A stretch of DNA of 63,671 nucleotides, counting the filler, from Octopus bimaculoides (lineage: Eukaryota), in the NCBI RefSeq assembly GCF_001194135.2. It is 5 parts of 4 records of this genome, joined end to end, with 100 filler letters (N's around TTAATTAATTAA, not from the genome) between each part and the next. Parts side by side here need not be neighbours in the genome. Positions count along the whole stretch, not along the records: positions 56,870 to 61,019 come from NW_026295624.1; 4 more parts are not named here. One strand, given 5' to 3'. The notes beneath the pieces were generated by a model. The model ran no database searches, was not told where the DNA came from, and worked only from the letters and a program-made list of their open reading frames with translations. A program made the position numbers and the translations under genes. Numbering within the stretch: position 1 is the first letter of the stretch; every line of letters begins with the position of its first letter. Shown in pieces: positions 8,380 to 61,387 of the stretch.

Positions 8380-10325
8380 TATGGAGAGAGAGATATGCAC
8401 TCACACAGAGTAAGGAGGAGATTAAAGAAGAGGAGTGAAAATATGAATCACAGCAGACAAATATGAAAAGATCAATGCGTAAACGGTGTCAGACACGATA
8501 AAGTCAATATTTCCCAAATTGAGAAATCGAACAATGGAGCAAGTTTTGTAAAAAGACAGATCGGTGAATAGATTAGTAAATACTCTAATGAAGTACAATA
8601 GAAAATAAAGTTGTTTTTTATTTGAAATGTAAGCGTTGAATTAGCGAAATGCAAATACAACGTATGGATATAAAAAAAATCAAAAATAAATAATGAAACT
8701 GAAGTAATAGTCACAGCATCACAGAGATAATCATGTAATTAAACTGAATGAAGTTGTCAATATTAGTTTGCTAATGCTTTAGTAAGTGAAGCAGTGGATG
8801 TGCCAATGAAAAATTTCAGGGTCCCTCTGAGTATTAGGAGGGAGGGAGTGAAATAGCAATTTCGCGAATGGCGTGTGTACCCTAAGGCCCGCAACAAAGT
8901 AGTATAAAGGATAAACCCCACTCCGGAATCATATAGATTCATTGGGTCGATTTTCTAATTTCTGGGACTTATATATTCTCCACCTGGTCAAGACACCTGT
9001 CTCTCGCAGGAGCACTCCCATTTGCCAGCTGACTGGACTGCAACAACGATTGAAATATTTTGCTTAAGAATACAGCGCGTTGCACGGTCCAGGAAATGAA
9101 ATCGCAATTTTACGATCATGAATCCAACATCCTAACCACGAAACCATGTGCCTCCACAAAGATCTGCAGCAAAGTGAACTCTAATACAGTTACTCAAGAA
9201 TCATGCAGTAGTATTAAACCGGGCGATGGATAGAGAATGGAACATAATGTGCGTGTTGTGAGGTTATTCAAAAGTTCAATGCTTCATAGTGACTGTTAGT
9301 TTCATCCCGGGTGGTAATCGTCAGGCCGTGAAATTTTTTGTATATATGTGATTAAGACTTTTTATTATGCTCCAATGAATCTCAGTCTCTCAAACAATAA
9401 TTCACACCTGTCCTGTTTCCATGTTAACACTTGCTTTCACATGCTACCCCGATGACTTTCAAATTAAAAGTATCTACCTATTATTAGCAGGTAATTCTGT
9501 AGCGGAGATTCCTGCAGCTTCCGTTTACCAAATTTTATTCAGATGGCTTTGGTTGATCCGAAGCTATTTGAATACCAGGAAAGACATTTACACAAGGTAA
9601 CGCGCAGTGGGATTGAACCGGAAATTACGCAGTTGCAATGTGAACTACTTAATCACACACAACCATGCGTTGTAAATGAGATCAGAGGATCATTAATACG
9701 CAGGAATGAGGGGAGGGCAACAGATGATACGCGAATACATGAGTACTGCACTAAAAAAAAAGACAATAATCTGTGGTTTATGTGACACGCATGTCTAAGG
9801 CGAAACATAGAGATACTATGAACAAAAGGCATTAAAATTAGAATTTCAGATTCCAATGTGATCAGACATATATAGAGAACAAACAATTATATATAATTGC
9901 AAATAAAATAACAAAATAATTTGTTTGATCATTCACGTGATGTTCATTGGGAAATATTCGGTTAGAAAGTTAAGATGAAAAAGACTGGCATTGGTTGAAG
10001 TCTGGGAGATTTGATGAGACAACGGAGACTAAAGCAATTTTGTGATTATTGTTGTTTTGGAAAGGTTTAGAGATAATAAAATGTATACATACACACATGC
10101 ATACATAGATGTTTTAAGTATATGGATGTGCGCATACAGACTAAAGCACATGTCAAATGTATATATGTATGGAAAGATAATAAAACTTATATAGATATTA
10201 ATATGGCTTTCAGTCATGAAACTTCGTTTGAATATTTGAAATTACTGTGGAAAAGAAGAAAAGTATAATACATATATAAAAGCAGTATATGGATAGCGCG
10301 CATGTATATCTATATACATACATAA

Positions 10326-10360
<35 letters not shown>

Positions 10361-10388
10361 TGTATGTATGTATGTATGTATATATATA

Positions 10389-10447
<59 letters not shown>

Positions 10448-10971
10448 TATNNNNNNNNNNNNNNNNNNNNNNNNNNNNNNNNNNNNNNNNNNNNNNNNNN
10501 NNNNNNNNNNNNNNNNNNNNNNNNNNNNNNNNNNNNNNNNNNNNNNNNNNNNNNNNNNNNNNNNNNNNNNNNNNNNNNNNNNNNNNNNNNNNNNNNNNNN
10601 NNNNNNNNNNNNNNNNNNNNNNNNNNNNNNNNNNNNNNNNNNNNNNNNNNNNNNNNNNNNNNNNNNNNNNNNNNNNNNNNNNNNNNNNNNNNNNNNNNNN
10701 NNNNNNNNNNNNNNNNNNNNNNNNNNNNNNNNNNNNNNNNNNNNNNNNNNNNNNNNNNNNNNNNNNNNNNNNNNNNNNNNNNNNNNNNNNNNNNNNNNNN
10801 NNNNNNNNNNNNNNNNNNNNNNNNNNNNNNNNNNNNNNNNNNNNNNNNNNNNNNNNNNNNNNNNNNNNNNNNNNNNNNNNNNNNNNNNNNNNNNNNNNNN
10901 NNNNNNNNNNNNNNNNNNNNNNNNNNNNNNNNNNNNNNNNNNNNNNNNNNNNNNNNNNNNNNNNNNNNNNN

Positions 10972-11108
10972 TGCCACCACCCCCTGCTGGAGCCTCGTGG
11001 AGCTTTAGATGTTTTCGCTCAATAAACACACACAACGCCCGGTCTGGGAATCGAAACCGCGATCCTCCGACCGCGATTCCGCTGCTCTAACCACTGGACT
11101 ATTGTGCC
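10972..11108 (-). mobile_element. SINE family E head (runs into gap)
   Basis: Reverse complement of 22796-22935. Confidence 0.75.
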
Positions 11109-11109
11109 C

Positions 11110-11360
11110 CCTCTTGCGCCCTTTTAAAGCCTAGCGAGGCTCGCGGGCCCGGTTTCCTGGTTTCAATGGCGTATGTGTTCCCCAGCTGGACGGGACGCCA
11201 GTCCATCGCAGCGTTACTCATTTTTGCCAGCTGAGTGGACTGGAGCAACGGGAAATGAAGTGTTTTGCTCAAGAAAACAATGCATCGCCCGGTCCAGGAA
11301 TCGAAACCATAATCTTAAGATCATGATGCTGACACCCTAACCACTAAGCCACGCGCCTCC
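11110..11360 (-). mobile_element. tRNA-derived SINE (C-type core, tail F)
   Basis: Core CCAGCTGAGTGGACTGGAGCAAC.GGAAATGAAGTG.TTTGCTCAAG with a distinct GC-rich tail. Confidence 0.75.
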
Positions 11361-11770
11361 ATATATCTATATATGTATATGTATATTAACATACATATAT
11401 CTAAATATACATACATGCGTACGTACATACATACAGGTAAGCATAACAAAAATAATAGTGAAAGTGACTTCGAATTTCGTCCAGTTAAGCCATTATCGGA
11501 AAGCTCGGTGATGGTTTAACTGGGAAAAACTTTGAAGCCACTGTCAACAATACTCTTGCTTAAGAGTAATAAGATTGTACTCACATGTATACATATATGT
11601 GCGTGTGTGGCGTGCCTATGCGTGTATAAACGAATACGGATACAGCGTGAAACAAAGAGAGAAACGAAGTTGAAAATGCAACTGGAGTTTTAAGGAGGTT
11701 TAACACTTATTTTACATTTAAGGTTTGTAAACGTAAAGAAATATTCTCAAGGACTCCAGGTGCATTTTTA

Positions 11771-11814
<44 letters not shown>

Positions 11815-12589
11815 NNNNNNNNNNNNNNNNNNNNNNNNNNNNNNNNNNNNNNNNNNNNNNNNNNNNNNNNNNNNNNNNNNNNNNNNNNNNNNNNNNNNNN
11901 NNNNNNNNNNNNNNNNNNNNNNNNNNNNNNNNNNNNNNNNNNNNNNNNNNNNNNNNNNNNNNNNNNNNNNNNNNNNNNNNNNNNNNNNNNNNNNNNNNNN
12001 NNNNNNNNNNNNNNNNNNNNNNNNNNNNNNNNNNNNNNNNNNNNNNNNNNNNNNNNNNNNNNNNNNNNNNNNNNNNNNNNNNNNNNNNNNNNNNNNNNNN
12101 NNNNNNNNNNNNNNNNNNNNNNNNNNNNNNNNNNNNNNNNNNNNNNNNNNNNNNNNNNNNNNNNNNNNNNNNNNNNNNNNNNNNNNNNNNNNNNNNNNNN
12201 NNNNNNNNNNNNNNNNNNNNNNNNNNNNNNNNNNNNNNNNNNNNNNNNNNNNNNNNNNNNNNNNNNNNNNNNNNNNNNNNNNNNNNNNNNNNNNNNNNNN
12301 NNNNNNNNNNNNNNNNNNNNNNNNNNNNNNNNNNNNNNNNNNNNNNNNNNNNNNNNNNNNNNNNNNNNNNNNNNNNNNNNNNNNNNNNNNNNNNNNNNNN
12401 NNNNNNNNNNNNNNNNNNNNNNNNNNNGGGAAAAACTTTGAAGCCACTGTCAACAATACTCTTGCTTAAGAGTAATAAGATTGTACTCACATGTATACAT
12501 ATATATCTCTGTAGATATATATACATATACATACAAACATACATACGTACATAAATATAGACTCTCATATATACATTCTTATTTTTCTT

Positions 12590-12970
12590 TTATTATTTTG
12601 TTTCAGTCATTTGACTGCGGTCATACTGGAGCAGCACGTTTAGTCGACCAAATCGACCCCAGGTATTATTCTTTGTAAACCTAGTACTTATTCTATCGGT
12701 TCCTTTTGCCGTACCGCTGACTTATGGGGACGTAAACACACCAACGTCGGTTGTCAAGCGATGGTGTCGGGACAAATACATACACACAAACACATACACA
12801 CTTACATACACACACACACAGGGCTTCTTTCAGATTCCGTCTACCAAATCCACTCACAAGGCTTTGGTCGACCCGAGTCTATAGAAGACACTTGCCCAAG
12901 ATGCCACGCAGTGGGACTGAAACCGGAACCATGTGGTTGGTAAGCAAGCTACCTACTACACGGCCATATA
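12590..12970 (-). mobile_element. SINE family A
   Basis: Near full-length match to 864-1231. Confidence 0.85.
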
Positions 12971-13019
12971 TGCATATATATACACACACACACTATATAT
13001 ATATATCGATCTATATATA

Positions 13020-13949
13020 GATCGATATTTAAAATATTGATTTTATCAAGTGGCCAGCATGGGAATAAAAACCATCAAAGGTAACAATTATTTAAAATTA
13101 TAATATAGGGTATCTAAGAGATACCGCCACGCTGAAAAATAGCAGTCAAATCTTGACTCTAAACCACAATAAATGTTCATATAACACAAAGAGCGAAGAC
13201 GAAGACTAAATAAACTAGTAAAAATAACTGGATAATTCCAGATCCCGGATTTCTGGCTTTGCATAATAAATGCTTTGCCTTCATCGGTGGAATATACTCA
13301 GAAAAGCACATAAATACAAATATATATATAGAGACATACAGTATACTTACATATACGAACGTATACATACATATATATGCACGTATGTACACAACCAGTT
13401 TAAATTGCCCGCCTAAAAACTCCTCGTGCGATATGGTCAGAATATCACCGCAGTAAATACACCGACAAAATAAATTTATATAAATAAGGATAAGATCGAT
13501 ATTTAAAATATTGATTTTATCAAGTGGCCAGCATGGGAATAAAAACCATCAAAGGTAACAATTATTTAAAATTATAATATAGGGTATCTAAGAGATACCG
13601 CCACGCTGAAAAATAGCAGTCAAATCTTGACTCTAAACCACAATAAATGTTCATATAGCACAACGAGCGAAGACGAAGACAAAATAAACTAGTAAAAATA
13701 ACTGGATAATTCAAGATCCCGGATTTCTGGCTTTGCACAATAAATGCTTTGCCTTCATCGGTGGAATATACTCAGAAAAGCACATAAATACAAATATATA
13801 TATATAAACATACAGTATACTTACATATACGAACGTATACATACATATATATGCACGTATGTACATCTCTTAGATACCCTATATTATAATTTTAAATAAT
13901 TGTTACCTTTGATGGTTTTATTCCCATGCTGGCCACTTGATAAAATCAA
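13020..13949. repeat. 372-bp direct duplication plus inverted partial copy
   Basis: 13020-13391 and 13494-13865 are ~98% identical. 13866-13949 is the reverse complement of 13511-13595. Confidence 0.9.
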
Positions 13950-56869: not shown

Positions 56870-57470
56870 GGCAAACAAATAGCCAACTCTTTTTCAATAA
56901 TGTCTTTGTTGAAGAGGGTTAAGGCATTGCGTGACCTACAATAGGTCCGCATGACCACTGTCCTCTTCTCCATTTCTTTCAACCACTGCTTGGGTGGGCA
57001 CAGTTCCCACTCCAAGACAGTGTTGTTCTTTTTTGCCATGCCTTCAAAAGTTTAAAAAAAAAACAAAGAAAAGTTCGAACCAAAAAGTTCACAATAAAAA
57101 TAAATAAATAAATAAAAAGGAACAGAAAGACAGAGCAGAGAAAAAGAAGGAAGGAAGACAGTTTGATGCACAGCAACACAATTCCGGGCACTCGGTAATC
57201 CTAGCAGGTATTCCAGTAAAGGCAATCCACAGCAACAGGAACAGAGAAATCCTTAGAATTTTTTCGTCAAGTCTTTCGGAGGCGAGATACGCCCACAAAA
57301 AGCGACGGTTCTCTCCATTATGTGAGACACAAAAAGTTTTTTCACAAAAAATTCTCAGTCCGCTCTCATGGTGAGTCGAACACACCCACCAATAACAGTG
57401 AACGAGAACACAATTTGCTCACTATAAAATGAACAACAAATACAGCCGCCGTGGCAGAAGAAATTGCCCA
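56870..57470 (-). mobile_element. Probable 5' end (UTR plus ORF1 start) of a non-LTR retrotransposon
   Basis: ORF MAKKNNTVLEWELCPPKQWLKEMEKRTVVMRTYCRSRNALTLFNKDIIEKELAICL runs into the gap and follows a CpG-containing, pyrimidine-rich leader. The ORF1 assignment is inferred. Confidence 0.4.
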
Positions 57471-58333
57471 GAGCTAGGCTAAATTTACTGAAACAAATTA
57501 AACACAATAAATTATACCCAGCTCAAAAAACCAATTCCACCTACCTCGGTCGACTTCACAATTTTCAATTTCTGGACGGCACTCACACACGTCCACAATG
57601 TTCAATAGCAAGAAGGACTAACTCTCCAATACCGGAAGCAAGCTTCTTACCATACGGCCACACCTGTGCCTTTCTAGAACTTATTTTACAAACCAAGAAG
57701 AAAAGAAATGTAAAATTCTGGTGGGTTAGAACTCTGAGTAACATACAAAGACAGAACTAAATACTGGACCATTCCCCATCTATTTAGATAAGTAGTTTTA
57801 GACCAGGGTTCATATAAGAATTGGTTGACAAAGTTCATGTGCAATAAACTGGTTATTCTTCTACAATACATAAAATATTTTAACAGGCATAGATGTGACA
57901 ATGAAACATTACCACTTCTGAGGTGTAATANNNNNNNNNNNNNNNNNNNNNNNNNNNNNNNNNNNNNNNNNNNNNNNNNNNNNNNNNNNNNNNNNNNNNN
58001 NNNNNNNNNNNNNNNNNNNNNNNNNNNNNNNNNNNNNNNNNNNNNNNNNNNNNNNNNNNNNNNNNNNNNNNNNNNNNNNNNNNNNNNNNNNNNNNNNNNN
58101 NNNNNNNNNNNNNNNNNNNNNNNNNNNNNNNNGAACCTTGGTCATCTTCGAAAGTGACAGGTGAACAACATTCTGCAGTCATTGCTGTATTAGCTACTTT
58201 GGTCCACACCCCCACAAAAGAGCAAAGCATATTTATTAAAGTTTTTTTTTTAAATGCGGAGGAAAAAGCAAACTTTTCTGCAACTAAATTATACTGGAGC
58301 ATAGGTGACTGATGGGAGAGTGAGAGGCGGGGT

Positions 58334-58705
58334 CTAATTAATTAACAATAACTGTTTTCCAGTCATACAGGAAAGGGTTATTCAGCACCTAACATTGGAC
58401 CTTGTTGACATAATTTGAGATTGGCATTTTCACCATTGACCAGCTATAGACTAAAAGCATTACCTTTTTAACCATGTAATCCTATTGGGTTTCACATCAT
58501 GGTGCAGATACAGAAGACTGTTGCATCCTTTGTTTTTAAAGATGACGGACGACTACTTGGGCTATTATTTTCTTCGACACACTTGGGTTGACCAATGTCT
58601 TGTAATAATAATTTAATGGGCAGAAACCGCATGGAAACTTGAAAGTTTGCAAAAAAAATGGTGATGTGTCAGTGTGTATGTGTGCATGCACACAAATTTG
58701 TTTAC
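58334..58705. repeat. Left arm of >=372-bp inverted repeat (partner 60649-61019)
   Basis: Reverse-complement match with about a dozen differences. The right arm ends at a gap. Confidence 0.92.
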
Positions 58706-58831
58706 ATTACAGCACCAAACATTGTTGGTGTTCTTTAGATCAATGGTTCCAGTCTTCCAACTGACATTGCCAGTCTTTTGAGTATAATACTTAATGGAAC
58801 CAGACCATTCAAGTGTATCTGGAAGCTTCAT
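58613..58831 (-). pseudogene. Inverted, truncated copy of the USP37-like exon fused to the inverted repeat
   Basis: 58706-58848 is the reverse complement of 59073-59215 (2 mismatches). Encodes MKLPDTLEWSGSIKYYTQKTGNVSWKTGTIDLKNTNNVWCCN, then 30 unrelated residues. Confidence 0.65.
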
Positions 58832-59089
58832 ACTGATGGTGCTAGGTGAATGAGCTGCAATTCTCGGTTTTCCTTTCCTCGACTGCGAGTCCGTCTTGCG
58901 GTATCCGATCCTTGAAGCTTGCCCCGACCCAAGGTACACCAGGTATAGCAGCTGCNNNNNNNNNNTTTCCTTTCCTCGACTGCGAGTCCGTCTTGCGGTA
59001 TCCGATCCTTGAAGCTTGCCCCGACCCAAGGTACACCAGGTATAGCAGCTGCTTCTCCCAAACCTAGACCGTCACCTAGCACCATCAGT

Positions 59090-59236
59090 ATGAAGCTTCC
59101 AGATACACTTGAATGGTCTGGTTCCATTAAGTATTATACTCAAAAGACTGGCAATATCAGTTGGAAGACTGGAACCCTTGATCTAAAGAACACCAACAAT
59201 GTTTGGTGCTGTAATGTGACGTTGAGTACCAATAAG
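59090..59236 (+). CDS. USP37: Putative first coding exon of a USP37-like deubiquitinase (N-terminal PH-like domain)
   Basis: LEWSGSIKYYTQKTGNISWKTGTLDLKNTNNVWCCNV aligns without gaps to the human USP37 N-terminus as I recall it (LKIHGPIRIRSMQTGITKWKEGSFEIVEKENKVSLVV). G-x-I, TG-x3-WK-x-G and the hydrophobic spacing are conserved. Possible phase-0 donor AAG|GTTTAC. Not database-verified. Confidence 0.55.
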
Positions 59237-59439
59237 GTTTACCCAGCTATAACATTTAAGTCGATTCGTTCAAACATCAATTTTTAAGAAACGGCTTCTT
59301 CTGGAATTTGCTGGTGGGCTAGGTGAATGAGCTGCAATTCTCGGTTTTCCTTTCCTCGACTGCGAGTCCGTCTTGCGGTATCCGATCCTTGAAGCTTGCC
59401 CCGACCCAAGGTATAGCAGCTGCTTCTCCCAAACCTAGA

Positions 59440-59580
59440 CCGTCGCTTAACACGTCTTATCCTGACCGCAGCCCCGTTCGAAAAGGTCACGAACGCCGAT
59501 CGAGGCTCCCTCTGCCCTGTTTCCCCTTCCGGTCGACTCGCGCTTCCGGTCAGCCTCCCCAGACACTGACGTCATACCAT
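59440..59580. promoter_or_regulatory. CpG-rich promoter-like island with two ETS motifs and a CRE
   Basis: ~16 CpG in ~135 bp. CCGGAAG on the minus strand at 59526-59532 and 59543-59549. TGACGTCA at 59567-59574. Confidence 0.6.
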
Positions 59581-61387
59581 ATAGATAACAAGGATTAGGA
59601 CTTTCAGAGATGTAAGAAAGGCACATTCAAAACTACGTGCAGTTTTAAAACATATAAAGAATTAAATGTTTCAAGTAAAATATAATTTCATACAGTATAA
59701 TTTCCTTAAACTTTTATAAACTTCCAACTGTTTTGCAGTTTTCAAAATAATCGTGGAACTTCCATGGGTATTGCTAGTTTGCATAACTATTTATCATCGC
59801 TGAACATCACTAATTTCCTTTGATTCTACAGTTTTCCGGTGAAAATTATTAGGAATTACACGATAAGTCATAACATTCAATAATCTCAGGCGATAGTTGC
59901 ATTGAAAACTATAGTCTATGCACAAGCTTGGATAATAATTGTGTACGTATTTTTCTTTAGGAACTTATTTGGTATATCACCGATTTAAAATCGGTCATTA
60001 TTGCTATTTATGTTGTGTTGTCTTTAAATGCTCATGGCAGAAATATTTAGTAGAATGAAGACTGCGTAAATACACAAGGAAGGTAAGGCTGTATTGATAA
60101 TCTTGAACATGTTTGTGAAAGAAAGAAAAATATGTTAAAAAATCTAGTTAGCTAGTCTGTCTTGTAAAATGTTTACTAAGCACGTGTTTTAAACTTGTGT
60201 TACATTCATAGCAATAATGTCTATTATTTGTTTCCAAGCATATATCCTTGTAGATAAATAAGAAAACATACAACGAGATATTTCGAATCAATGAAGTAGC
60301 CTCTACATGCTAGATATAACAGCCACATTTTCTCAAAATATCCTATCGTGGTGAAAAGGAACCACATGTAGCATACAGGCGCAATAGTGTCCCCCACCAC
60401 CTTTGTTTTTTTTATAACTTTCAGGATATTTTTTTTATGAAATTTTCTCCAAAAACGTATCAGATGCTGTAGATTCCAATTGTATCGGAATTTGTTGTGG
60501 AAAATTTCCGGAGAGGAGTTAGGTAAATCCTCAGGAGTCTGTTTTTGTTTTCTCATGACTTTCAGAAAAATGCGTATTCTTTTAATGAAATTTTCTGCGA
60601 ATATCTTTCAGATTGTGTAGATTATATCAGAATTTACTAACGAAAAAAGTAAACAAATTTGTGTGCATGCCCGCATACACACTGACACATCACCATTTAT
60701 TTGCAAAATTTCAAGTTTCCATGCGGTTTCTGCCCATCAAATTATTATTACAAGACATTGGTCAACCCAAGTGTGTCGAAGAAAATAATAGCCCAAGTAG
60801 TCGTCCGTCATCTTTAAAAACAAAGGATTCAACAGTCTTCTGTATCTGCACCATGATGTGAAACCCAATAGAACTACATGGTTAAAAAGGTAATGCCTTT
60901 AGTCTATAGCTGGTCAATGGTGAAAATGCCAATCTCAAATTATGTCAAAAAGGTCCAATGTTAGGTGGGGAATAACCCTTTCCTGTATGACTGGAAAACA
61001 GTTATTGTTAATTAATTAGNNNNNNNNNNNNNNNNNNNNNNNNNNNNNNNNNNNNNNNNNNNNTTAATTAATTAANNNNNNNNNNNNNNNNNNNNNNNNN
61101 NNNNNNNNNNNNNNNNNNNTATATATATATATATATATAGTCACTACGAGGATATATTGTCCTCGTAAAGGGACACTGGTTTAATATCTTATATTGTTGA
61201 GAAATATTTCTTCAATATAAAGAGGTATATTATAAATATCAAAATATCAAATATTATTTAGTAAGAAATGAAGAGTTTAAATGCATATAAATTAATTTAT
61301 TAACCTTTCTTAATAATATTTTTAATACAGCCTACAATTCTTTCAATTTACACTCAATACAAATTACAAACCTATAGAATAAACTAA

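What the first reader, a model, noticed from the sequence alone, without database searches (positions are those of the whole stretch)
59090..59287. Short ORF is a USP37-like N-terminal PH domain present in two orientations
The 49-codon exon aligns ungapped to the USP37/USP26/USP29 N-terminal PH-like region: about 11 identities in 43 positions, by eye and from memory of the human sequence. The two copies differ by only two substitutions, both conservative (I/V, L/I). No catalytic USP exons were recognised in the window, so this may be an orphan or micro-protein copy. The minus copy yields a 72-aa chimera.
Basis: partly seen in the sequence, partly recalled or inferred. Interest (0 to 1): 0.7.

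Follow-up and report, generated by a model that had tools for sequence, protein, structure and literature searches.

The report
Broken retrocopy of octopus USP37 start
The short ORF really is the start of an octopus USP37 (its CDC45-binding PH domain), but here it sits in intron-less, frameshifted, truncated copies arranged head to head, so it is most likely a dead processed pseudogene and not a new micro-protein.

Summary
Two inverted 146-nt copies (58704-58849 minus, 59072-59217 plus) differ at two bases, giving I/V and L/I. The plus ORF is 65 aa and the minus ORF is a 72-aa chimera.

The USP37 guess is also right in substance. The peptide is 94-95% identical to an Octopus vulgaris protein and 86-88% identical to O. 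bimaculoides LOC106871317. In O. bimaculoides that gene lies directly upstream, on the same strand, of USP37-like catalytic exons. A cephalopod N-terminal profile aligns with human USP37 PH and a Pfam-positive UCH_N protein (hhalign 89%, E 2.5e-6). The best PDB fold match is 3U12, the USP37 PH domain. Pfam UCH_N itself does not detect it.

The window does not hold the working gene.
- Exon 1 and exon 2 are joined exactly at the splice junction, and two other cephalopods keep a 2-3 kb intron there.
- An 8-nt deletion shifts the frame and creates the stop at 59285-59287.
- Exon 2 breaks off after about 60 nt into an inverted copy of the mRNA's own 5' end.
- The flanks match nothing in the 23-kb stretch of the O. 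bimaculoides locus that I could fetch.

The proposed donor at 59236 is not an exon end.

Best reading: a rearranged processed pseudogene. The 10-N gap is an unmerged 87-nt overlap, and the minus copy lies on an 823-nt contig, so reads must confirm the palindrome.

The parts
59072..59260 (+). Plus copy of the ATG-bearing exon of the octopus USP37 orthologue. It holds 18 nt of 5'UTR (59072-59089) and 57 codons (ATG 59090 to ...TTTAAG 59260), which encode strands 1-4 of the PH domain.
   Evidence: blastn to O. bimaculoides L001 9983-10171, 92.6%. tblastn gives 93.7% identity to O. vulgaris P0008 and 85.7% to P0002.
59261..59320 (+). Exon-2-equivalent fragment, fused to exon 1 with no intron. An 8-nt deletion at about 59279/59280 shifts the frame and creates TAA at 59285-59287. 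Homology stops at ...GGTGGGCT (59320).
   Evidence: In L001, exon 1 ends AAG|GTAAGT at 10171 and exon 2 starts after ttctag at 12124. The window joins the two sequences exactly at that junction. In a second frame, IFKKRLLLEFAGGL matches P0002/P0008 residues 67-80.
58704..58862 (-). Minus copy of the same exon, covering mRNA positions -31 to +128 (ATG at 58831-58829). It is cut after codon 43 and joined to unrelated sequence A through a 2-nt GT microhomology.
   Evidence: blastn to L001 10128-9968, 93.2%. tblastn gives 95.3% identity to P0008. Homology upstream of the ATG stops at the O. bimaculoides acceptor ...tttcag|AATTGCAG.
58613..58831 (-). 72-aa chimeric ORF: 43 USP37 codons followed by 29 codons read from sequence A.
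58863..59071 (-). Loop of the palindrome. It is a G+C-rich segment 'U', contiguous with position -31 of the exon, and is a candidate upstream 5'UTR exon of the parent mRNA. It contains the 10-N gap (58956-58965), flanked by an exact 87-nt duplication (58869-58955 = 58966-52). Once the overlap is merged the loop is 125 nt.
   Evidence: The junction to the plus copy is at 59072-59073 (TC microhomology).
59321..59580 (-). Second, longer copy of U (59340 to about 59580) plus the first 19 nt of the ATG exon (59321-59339, positions -31 to -13), in inverted orientation. It is joined to the exon-2 fragment through a CT microhomology (59319-59320). G+C reaches 0.60. It contains TGACGTCA and two CCGGAAG motifs near its far end.
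   Evidence: It lacks the 9-nt insertion shared by the two halves of the loop copy.
58334..58705 (-). Left outer arm (A') of the large inverted repeat. It directly abuts the minus exon copy.
   Evidence: the repeat finder I1 and I3: 324 nt at 97% plus 66 nt at 88%. No match in L001 or L002.
60649..61019 (+). Right outer arm (A). It is separated from the plus exon copy by 1431 nt (59218-60648) that the left arm lacks. It runs to the edge of the piece.

Best explanation
The window holds non-functional, mRNA-derived (processed) partial copies of the 5' end of the octopus USP37 orthologue, not the working gene.

The parent gene encodes a deubiquitinase. In mammals its N-terminal PH domain tethers the enzyme to CDC45 of the replicative CMG helicase. 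Inferred history: a reverse-transcribed copy of the 5'UTR, coding exon 1 and the start of coding exon 2 was inserted away from the parent locus. It was then scrambled by template switching or break repair into a sense / antisense / sense arrangement.

Read on the minus strand, the order is:
1. U-long plus exon positions -31..-13;
2. inverted exon 1 (-18..+171) plus exon 2 (about 60 nt);
3. U-short plus exon positions -31..+128;
4. flank A.

Each of the three novel joints has a 2-nt microhomology. The copy has decayed: an 8-nt frameshifting deletion produces the stop that ends the 65-aa ORF, and there are substitutions at residues invariant in cephalopods (M44T, L58S). The 65-aa and 72-aa ORFs cover only about four of the seven PH strands and are not expected to fold.

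Shown: homology, identity of the parent gene, precise intron loss, frameshift, truncation, the junctions, and absence of flank homology within the 23 kb of the parent locus I could fetch.
Inferred: reverse transcription as the source, the order of the rearrangements, and lack of function.
For: Identity of the parent gene:
- phmmer over 1.84 billion proteins finds P0002 at E 2.5e-22 and P0003 at E 1.3e-8.
- P0002 is O. bimaculoides LOC106871317. A PF00443 gene lies next to it on the same strand, with USP37-like catalytic exons.
- O. vulgaris P0008 is 94-95% identical to the window copies.

PH-domain homology:
- hhalign 81% and then 88.8%, E 2.5e-6.
- The bridging protein P0006 passes Pfam UCH_N.
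- The AF2 model shows seven strands plus a C-terminal helix.
- Foldseek rank 1 is 3U12.

Processed origin:
- Exon 1 and exon 2 are joined exactly at the splice junction.
- The intron is present in O. bimaculoides (1.95 kb) and in a distant cephalopod (about 2.9 kb).
- Homology upstream of the ATG ends exactly at the orthologue's acceptor and continues into a G+C-rich segment like a 5'UTR exon.
- Nothing else in the piece matches the 23-kb O. bimaculoides locus, even with word size 7.

Decay:
- An 8-nt deletion and TAA.
- T44 and S58 at columns invariant in three cephalopods.

Background: LINE reverse transcriptase activity is documented in octopus (PMC9115989).
Against: - There is no poly(A) tail, no target-site duplication and no 3' part of the mRNA, so this is not a classical LINE-mediated retrocopy. 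Only the 5' end of the transcript is present.
- U could not be shown to be the parent's 5'UTR exon. It is absent from the 10 kb upstream in L001.
- U-long carries promoter-like motifs (TGACGTCA, CCGGAAG). If these lie upstream of the parent's transcription start, they would argue for a genomic source rather than an RNA source.
- The parent locus of the window's own species was not available.
- The species is unknown. If it is not close to O. bimaculoides, missing flank homology is weaker evidence.
- The region has two assembly gaps, so part of the architecture may be artefactual.
Confidence: 0.7

Rival explanations
1. The inverted arrangement is wholly or partly an assembly artefact. The minus copy lies on an 823-nt contig (58133-58955) bounded by gaps on both sides. 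It may be an allele or a second paralogous copy that the scaffolder placed and oriented here because of shared repeats. There would then be two separate fragments and no true palindrome.
For: - Gaps lie at 57931-58132 (202 N) and 58956-58965 (10 N).
- The 10-N gap sits at the centre of the palindrome and is flanked by an exact 87-nt duplication, a typical unmerged contig overlap.
- The left arm lacks 1431 nt that the right arm has.
Against: - The 87-nt overlap is exact and includes a 9-nt insertion that distinguishes this U copy from the other one at 59340 onwards. The two contigs therefore do seem to overlap in the given orientation.
- The arms differ (2/146 in the exon part, 3-12% in A). They are therefore not the same reads used twice.
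- The joint between inverted U and the plus exon copy (59072) lies inside the right-hand contig.
- Even if this rival is true, both fragments remain intron-less or truncated pseudogene pieces.
Confidence: 0.2
2. This is the genuine first coding exon of a functional USP37 gene or USP37 paralogue of this species, with a nearby inverted duplicate. This is the reader's implicit model: an exon with a donor, and the catalytic exons elsewhere.
For: - It has an intact ATG and 57 codons, 94% identical to the O. vulgaris protein.
- A G+C-rich, promoter-like segment lies nearby.
Against: - No usable donor exists at codon 57: the window reads AAG|TCGATT where the orthologues have AAG|GTAAGT or AAG|GTTTGT.
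- Exon 2 follows directly, frameshifted, and is cut after about 60 nt.
- There is no orthologous intron or flank sequence.
- The plus copy is preceded by inverted U instead of the natural upstream sequence.
Confidence: 0.05
3. The inverted pseudogene copies are a working hairpin-RNA locus. A minus-strand transcript starting in U-long would contain antisense and then sense exon 1. It would fold into a 146-bp stem with a 125-nt loop and yield small RNAs against USP37 mRNA.
For: - The stem is nearly perfect. The folding energy is about -323 kcal/mol against -125 +/- 7 for shuffles, computed with the duplicated overlap still in the loop.
- Promoter-like motifs lie at the upstream end.
- Pseudogene inverted repeats that give endo-siRNAs are known in mammals (PMC3616710; mouse oocyte studies, from my own knowledge).
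Against: - There is no expression or small-RNA evidence.
- The structure may not be real (see the assembly rival).
- Any recent inverted duplication folds like this by construction.
- No conservation in another species: O. bimaculoides shows a single copy within +/-10 kb of its gene.
Confidence: 0.05

Closest known systems
USP37 N-terminal PH domain (Pfam PF16674 UCH_N; PDB 3U12). It binds CDC45 of the CMG helicase (bioRxiv 10.1101/2024.09.03.610971; PMC12084625; PMC11398331).
   Same: - It sits at the extreme N-terminus.
- The core motif G-x-I-x(6)-TG-x(3)-WK-x-G is shared.
- The predicted topology is seven strands plus a C-terminal helix.
- The octopus orthologue lies directly upstream of USP37-like catalytic exons.
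- The profile-profile match covers the whole domain.
   Different: - The Pfam model does not detect any cephalopod copy.
- Identity to human is only about 25%.
- The window's copies encode only the first 43-63 residues and are detached from any catalytic domain.
- CDC45 binding by the octopus domain is untested.
Processed pseudogenes and retrocopies with internal inversion or template switching (LINE-mediated retrocopies, twin-priming inversions, chimeric retrocopies; review PMC5408686; mechanisms from my own knowledge).
   Same: - An intron is precisely removed.
- The copies are not in the parent locus.
- They show a frameshift and truncation.
- An inverted segment is joined at short microhomologies.
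   Different: - Only the 5' end of the mRNA is present.
- No poly(A) tail and no target-site duplication were found.
- The arrangement is sense / antisense / sense with a 146-nt overlap, more complex than a simple twin-priming inversion.
Pseudogene-derived inverted-repeat endo-siRNA loci (for example psiPPM1K, PMC3616710).
   Same: Inverted copies of part of a protein-coding gene that can form a long hairpin.
   Different: There is no evidence here of transcription or small RNAs. This is only a structural resemblance.

Membership tests
Pfam PF16674 UCH_N (USP37-type N-terminal PH domain) | Scores at or above the Pfam gathering threshold (25 bits) against the family HMM. | tested here: not met
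   No hit at E <= 10 for the window peptides, P0002, P0008 or the full PH domain of the distant cephalopod. The recalled human control scores 158.7 bits. The bridging Patiria protein P0006 scores 26.1 bits.
Pfam PF16674 UCH_N (USP37-type N-terminal PH domain) | Profile-level homology to bona fide family members over the whole domain. | tested here: met
   hhalign of the cephalopod profile against human USP37 plus the Patiria UCH_N domains gives 88.8% probability, E 2.5e-6, 89 columns (81% with the shorter profile). Pairwise BLASTP gives E 1e-4. An HMMER profile against PDB sequences did not find 3U12.
Pfam PF16674 UCH_N (USP37-type N-terminal PH domain) | PH-like fold (seven-stranded sandwich capped by a C-terminal helix). 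| tested here: inconclusive
   The AF2 single-sequence model of O. vulgaris P0008 has the right order of secondary structure, but mean pLDDT is 57. The best of 350,542 PDB chains is 3U12_A, the USP37 PH domain, with TM 0.50/0.56 but E 0.056.
USP37 orthologue (gene level) | N-terminal PH domain followed, in the same gene, by a USP (PF00443) catalytic domain. | tested here: met
   Met for the O. bimaculoides orthologue: P0002 at L001 10001-13445 is followed on the same strand by a PF00443 gene model from 14569. Its exons are 61-74% identical to human USP37 motifs. The annotation splits the locus into two models. Not met for the window copy, which has no catalytic exon.
Processed pseudogene / retrocopy | Precise absence of parental introns. 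| tested here: met
   The intron after codon 57 is present in L001 (10172-12123) and L002 (about 10214-13086) and is exactly absent at window 59260/59261. A second candidate junction lies at position -31.
Processed pseudogene / retrocopy | Poly(A) tail and target-site duplications. | tested here: not met
   The copy ends inside exon 2 at an inversion junction. No A-tail or duplication flanks it.
Processed pseudogene / retrocopy | Located away from the parent locus, and an intact parent exists in the same genome. | not testable with these tools
   There is no flank homology to the O. bimaculoides locus. Only 4.15 kb of the source genome is available, and the window ORFs are not in the contig index.

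The most novel reading that the evidence does not exclude
The head-to-head pseudogene copies are real and are transcribed from the retained G+C-rich, CRE/ETS-containing segment. The transcript forms a 146-bp hairpin whose small RNAs tune expression of the replisome-protecting deubiquitinase USP37 in octopus. This would be a cephalopod example of pseudogene-derived endo-siRNA regulation.
Probability: 0.05. Interest if true: 0.6.

Novelty: new member of a known kind. Interest (0 to 1): 0.25.

Why it matters
The main value is for annotation.
- It shows that cephalopod USP37 has the CDC45-tethering PH domain although Pfam UCH_N misses it.
- It shows that current octopus annotations split this N-terminus off as an 'uncharacterized' or 'hypothetical' small protein.
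- It warns that this window's ORFs should be marked as pseudogene fragments and not as micro-proteins.
- It flags a probable scaffolding defect: an unmerged 87-nt overlap at a 10-N gap.

A 5'-end-only, inverted retrocopy is a minor curiosity for people who study template switching by reverse transcriptases in cephalopod genomes.

Tried and rejected
- Pfam on the window peptides and on all cephalopod N-termini gave no UCH_N hit.
- The word-indexed protein search with the 65-aa peptide found nothing.
- The same search with concatenated octopus catalytic exons also found nothing, so I could not retrieve named mollusc USP37 proteins.
- phmmer and profile searches of PDB sequences gave nothing relevant, only a chance nanobody match on WSGSIKYY.
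- Three exhaustive-search hits were rejected as repeat-driven chance matches: P0001 (a low-complexity repeat translation), P0004 (WW-domain repeats sharing YY-x-x-x-TG-x-x-SW) and P0005.
- A tblastn hit of human residues 72-87 at L001 17115-17162 (E 0.15) was rejected. A stop codon lies immediately 5' of it in that frame. I judged by eye that exon 2 of P0002 already covers that part of the PH domain.
- Rfam and tRNA scans of the piece found nothing meaningful.
- A search for the U segment in the 10 kb upstream of the O. bimaculoides exon failed.
- Exact look-ups of the 65-aa and 72-aa ORFs in the contig index found nothing.
- A bacterial-type promoter scan of U-long is irrelevant and was empty.
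- I considered that sequence A might be a SINE/LINE 3' end, which would fit a template-switch chimeric retrocopy. No repeat library was available to test this.

Full report
**1. What is in the sequence**

The piece (56870-61019) is A+T-rich eukaryotic DNA with two assembly gaps, at 57931-58132 (202 N) and 58956-58965 (10 N).
It starts at ATG 59090 and ends at TAA 59285-59287, 65 codons.
- A second copy of its first 43 codons lies on the minus strand, with its ATG at 58831.
- The inverted repeat is 146 nt (58704-58849 vs 59072-59217) and 99% complementary. The mismatches are 58744/59177 and 58765/59156.
- The minus copy reads on into unrelated sequence and yields exactly 72 aa.

A larger inverted repeat surrounds these copies. 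A' (58334-58705) pairs with A (60649-61019) at 88-97% identity and reaches the edge of the piece. In the left arm the exon copy abuts A' directly. In the right arm 1431 nt (59218-60648) lie between them.

**2. Is it a USP37-type PH domain?**

Direct profile tests fail.
- Pfam gives no hit at E <= 10.
- PDB sequences give none.

I recalled the human USP37 N-terminus from memory and confirmed it as UCH_N at 158.7 bits.
- BLASTP against it gives 9/31 identities, 23.5 bits, E 1e-4 for that single comparison.

The decisive evidence came from an exhaustive phmmer search of 1.84 billion proteins.
- P0002 (178 aa, 90% identity over all 49 residues, E 2.5e-22) is Octopus bimaculoides XP_014773192.1, 'uncharacterized LOC106871317'.
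- P0003 (56% identity, E 1.3e-8) comes from another cephalopod-like contig.
- P0006 (E 3e-4) is a Patiria miniata protein with two tandem domains. It passes Pfam UCH_N itself (26.1 bits against a cut-off of 25, E 7.9e-6).
- Three other hits are repeat-driven chance matches.

In the O. bimaculoides chromosome, the P0002 gene (L001 10001-13445) is followed 1.1 kb downstream, on the same strand, by a 713-aa gene model with PF00443. The exons of that model are 74% identical (Cys box) and 61% identical to human USP37. P0002 is therefore the split-off N-terminus of the octopus USP37 orthologue.

An O. vulgaris 'hypothetical protein' (P0008, 119 aa) covers the whole domain. It is 93.7% identical to the plus copy and 95.3% identical to the minus copy.

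Further support:
- A profile of three cephalopod N-termini aligns with human USP37 plus the Patiria domains over 89 columns, including the C-terminal helix (hhalign 88.8%, E 2.5e-6; 81% with a shorter profile).
- A low-confidence AF2 model of P0008 (pLDDT 57) has seven strands and a C-terminal helix.
- Its best match among 350,542 PDB chains is 3U12, 'PH domain of USP37' (TM 0.50/0.56, E 0.056).

The homology call is supported even though the curated Pfam model misses cephalopods and an HMMER profile does not reach 3U12.

In mammals this domain binds CDC45 and tethers USP37 to the CMG helicase (bioRxiv 10.1101/2024.09.03.610971; PMC12084625; PMC11398331).

**3. Why this is not the working gene**

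In O. bimaculoides the ATG exon has these features:
- It begins at an acceptor, ...tttgtttcag|AATTGCAG, 31 nt before the ATG.
- It runs for 57 codons and ends ...ATATTTAAG|GTAAGT.
- Exon 2 starts 1.95 kb further on, after ...ttctag.

A much more distant cephalopod locus (L002, 51-57% protein identity) has the same structure. It has an acceptor 14 nt before the ATG, an exon end at ...ISFK|GTTTGT, and exon 2 about 2.9 kb downstream.

The window differs in five ways.
- The exon-2 sequence follows the last codon of exon 1 directly (59260/59261), exactly at the splice junction.
- Relative to O. bimaculoides it has an 8-nt deletion at about 59279/59280. In the other frame, IFKKRLLLEFAGGL still matches the orthologues.
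- Homology to exon 2 stops at 59320. The sequence then switches to the reverse complement of the exon's own first 19 nt (59321-59339), followed by a G+C-rich segment I call U (59340 to about 59580).
- In the minus copy, homology upstream of the ATG stops exactly at the orthologue's acceptor position (-31) and continues into the same U sequence (58863-59071). U therefore behaves like the upstream 5'UTR exon of a spliced mRNA.
- Nothing else in the piece matches the 23-kb O. bimaculoides locus, apart from a 52-nt dispersed repeat, even with word size 7.

The plus copy also carries T44 and S58 at columns invariant in three cephalopods.

**4. Architecture and mechanism**

Read on the minus strand, the order is:
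1. U-long plus exon positions -31..-13;
2. inverted exon 1 (-18..+171) plus exon 2 (about 60 nt);
3. U-short plus exon positions -31..+128;
4. A.

The three novel joints each show a 2-nt microhomology (read):
- CT at 59319-59320;
- TC at 59072-59073;
- GT at 58704-58705.

This sense / antisense / sense pattern with microhomology fits template switching during reverse transcription or replication-based repair. Which of the two, and in what order, is inference. Octopus genomes have active LINE elements that could supply reverse transcriptase (PMC9115989).

Against a classical retrocopy:
- There is no poly(A) tail, no target-site duplication and no 3' part of the mRNA.
- U-long carries TGACGTCA and two CCGGAAG motifs, which might be promoter DNA rather than transcript.

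**5. Assembly caveat**

The 10-N gap lies at the centre of the palindrome. It is flanked by an exact 87-nt duplication (58869-58955 = 58966-59052). This is an unmerged contig overlap, and once merged the loop is 125 nt.

The two halves share a 9-nt insertion that the other U copy lacks. This supports the adjacency as assembled. However, the minus copy lies wholly on an 823-nt contig between two gaps, so reads must confirm the palindrome. The arms are not identical, so they are not simply the same reads used twice.

**6. Function**

The most likely function is none. The 65-aa and 72-aa products hold only about four of the seven PH strands.

The most novel reading not excluded is a transcribed hairpin (146-bp stem; about -323 kcal/mol against -125 +/- 7 for shuffles) that gives small RNAs against USP37, as known for some mammalian pseudogenes (PMC3616710). 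I give this about 5%.

**7. Verdict**

- The domain assignment is right, a good call from sequence alone.
- The exon boundary and the micro-protein idea are not supported.
- This is an ordinary kind of object: a rearranged processed pseudogene fragment of a known gene, in an imperfectly assembled region.
- Its by-product value is for annotation of cephalopod USP37.

Noticed in passing
window 58869-59052: An exact 87-nt duplication flanks the 10-N gap (58956-58965). It is almost certainly an unmerged contig overlap left by the scaffolder or gap-closer, not a biological tandem repeat. TRF reports it as a 97-nt period, which is 87 nt plus the 10 N.
   Followed up: yes
L001 10001-23445 (O. bimaculoides CM046610.1): The annotation behind the L001 gene calls splits the USP37 orthologue into two gene models: a 178-aa 'uncharacterized' protein carrying the PH domain and part of the linker, and a 713-aa PF00443 model. 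O. vulgaris likewise has the N-terminus as a 119-aa 'hypothetical predicted protein' (P0008).
   Followed up: partly
P0006 / P0007 (Patiria miniata XP_038073202.1 / XP_038073201.1): A sea-star protein of about 800 aa carries two tandem UCH_N-like PH domains (around residues 150-270 and 318-440). They are followed by a long C-terminal region with no Pfam hit and no USP catalytic domain. This is a use of the USP37-type PH domain outside a deubiquitinase. In the 25-residue core it is closer to the octopus peptide (52-64% identity) than human USP37 is.
   Followed up: no
window 60427-60475 and 60575-60623: Two copies of a roughly 148-nt direct repeat unit (80% identity over 49 nt). One part (60553-60604) matches O. 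bimaculoides L001 1394-1444 at 86.5%. It is probably a dispersed octopus repeat.
   Followed up: no
window 56870-57039 (minus strand): An ATG-initiated ORF (MAKKNNTVLEWELCPPKQWLKEMEKRTVVMRTYCRSRNALTLFNKDIIEKELAICL...) runs off the left edge of the piece. It has no Pfam hit. It could be an exon of a neighbouring gene or a transposon remnant.
   Followed up: partly
window 59560-59580 and 59500-59545: A perfect palindromic CRE (TGACGTCA) and two CCGGAAG (ETS-type) motifs lie at the far end of the G+C-rich U-long segment, where G+C reaches 0.60 in an otherwise 0.30-0.40 region. Whether this is promoter DNA or 5'UTR of the parent gene is unresolved.
   Followed up: partly
P0004: The octopus motif YY-T-x-K-TG-N-x-SW resembles the WW-domain core (YYYN-x-x-TG-E-SSW). 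This is enough for a 7-repeat WW protein to reach E 3e-7 in the exhaustive search. I judged it a chance motif match, not homology.
   Followed up: no
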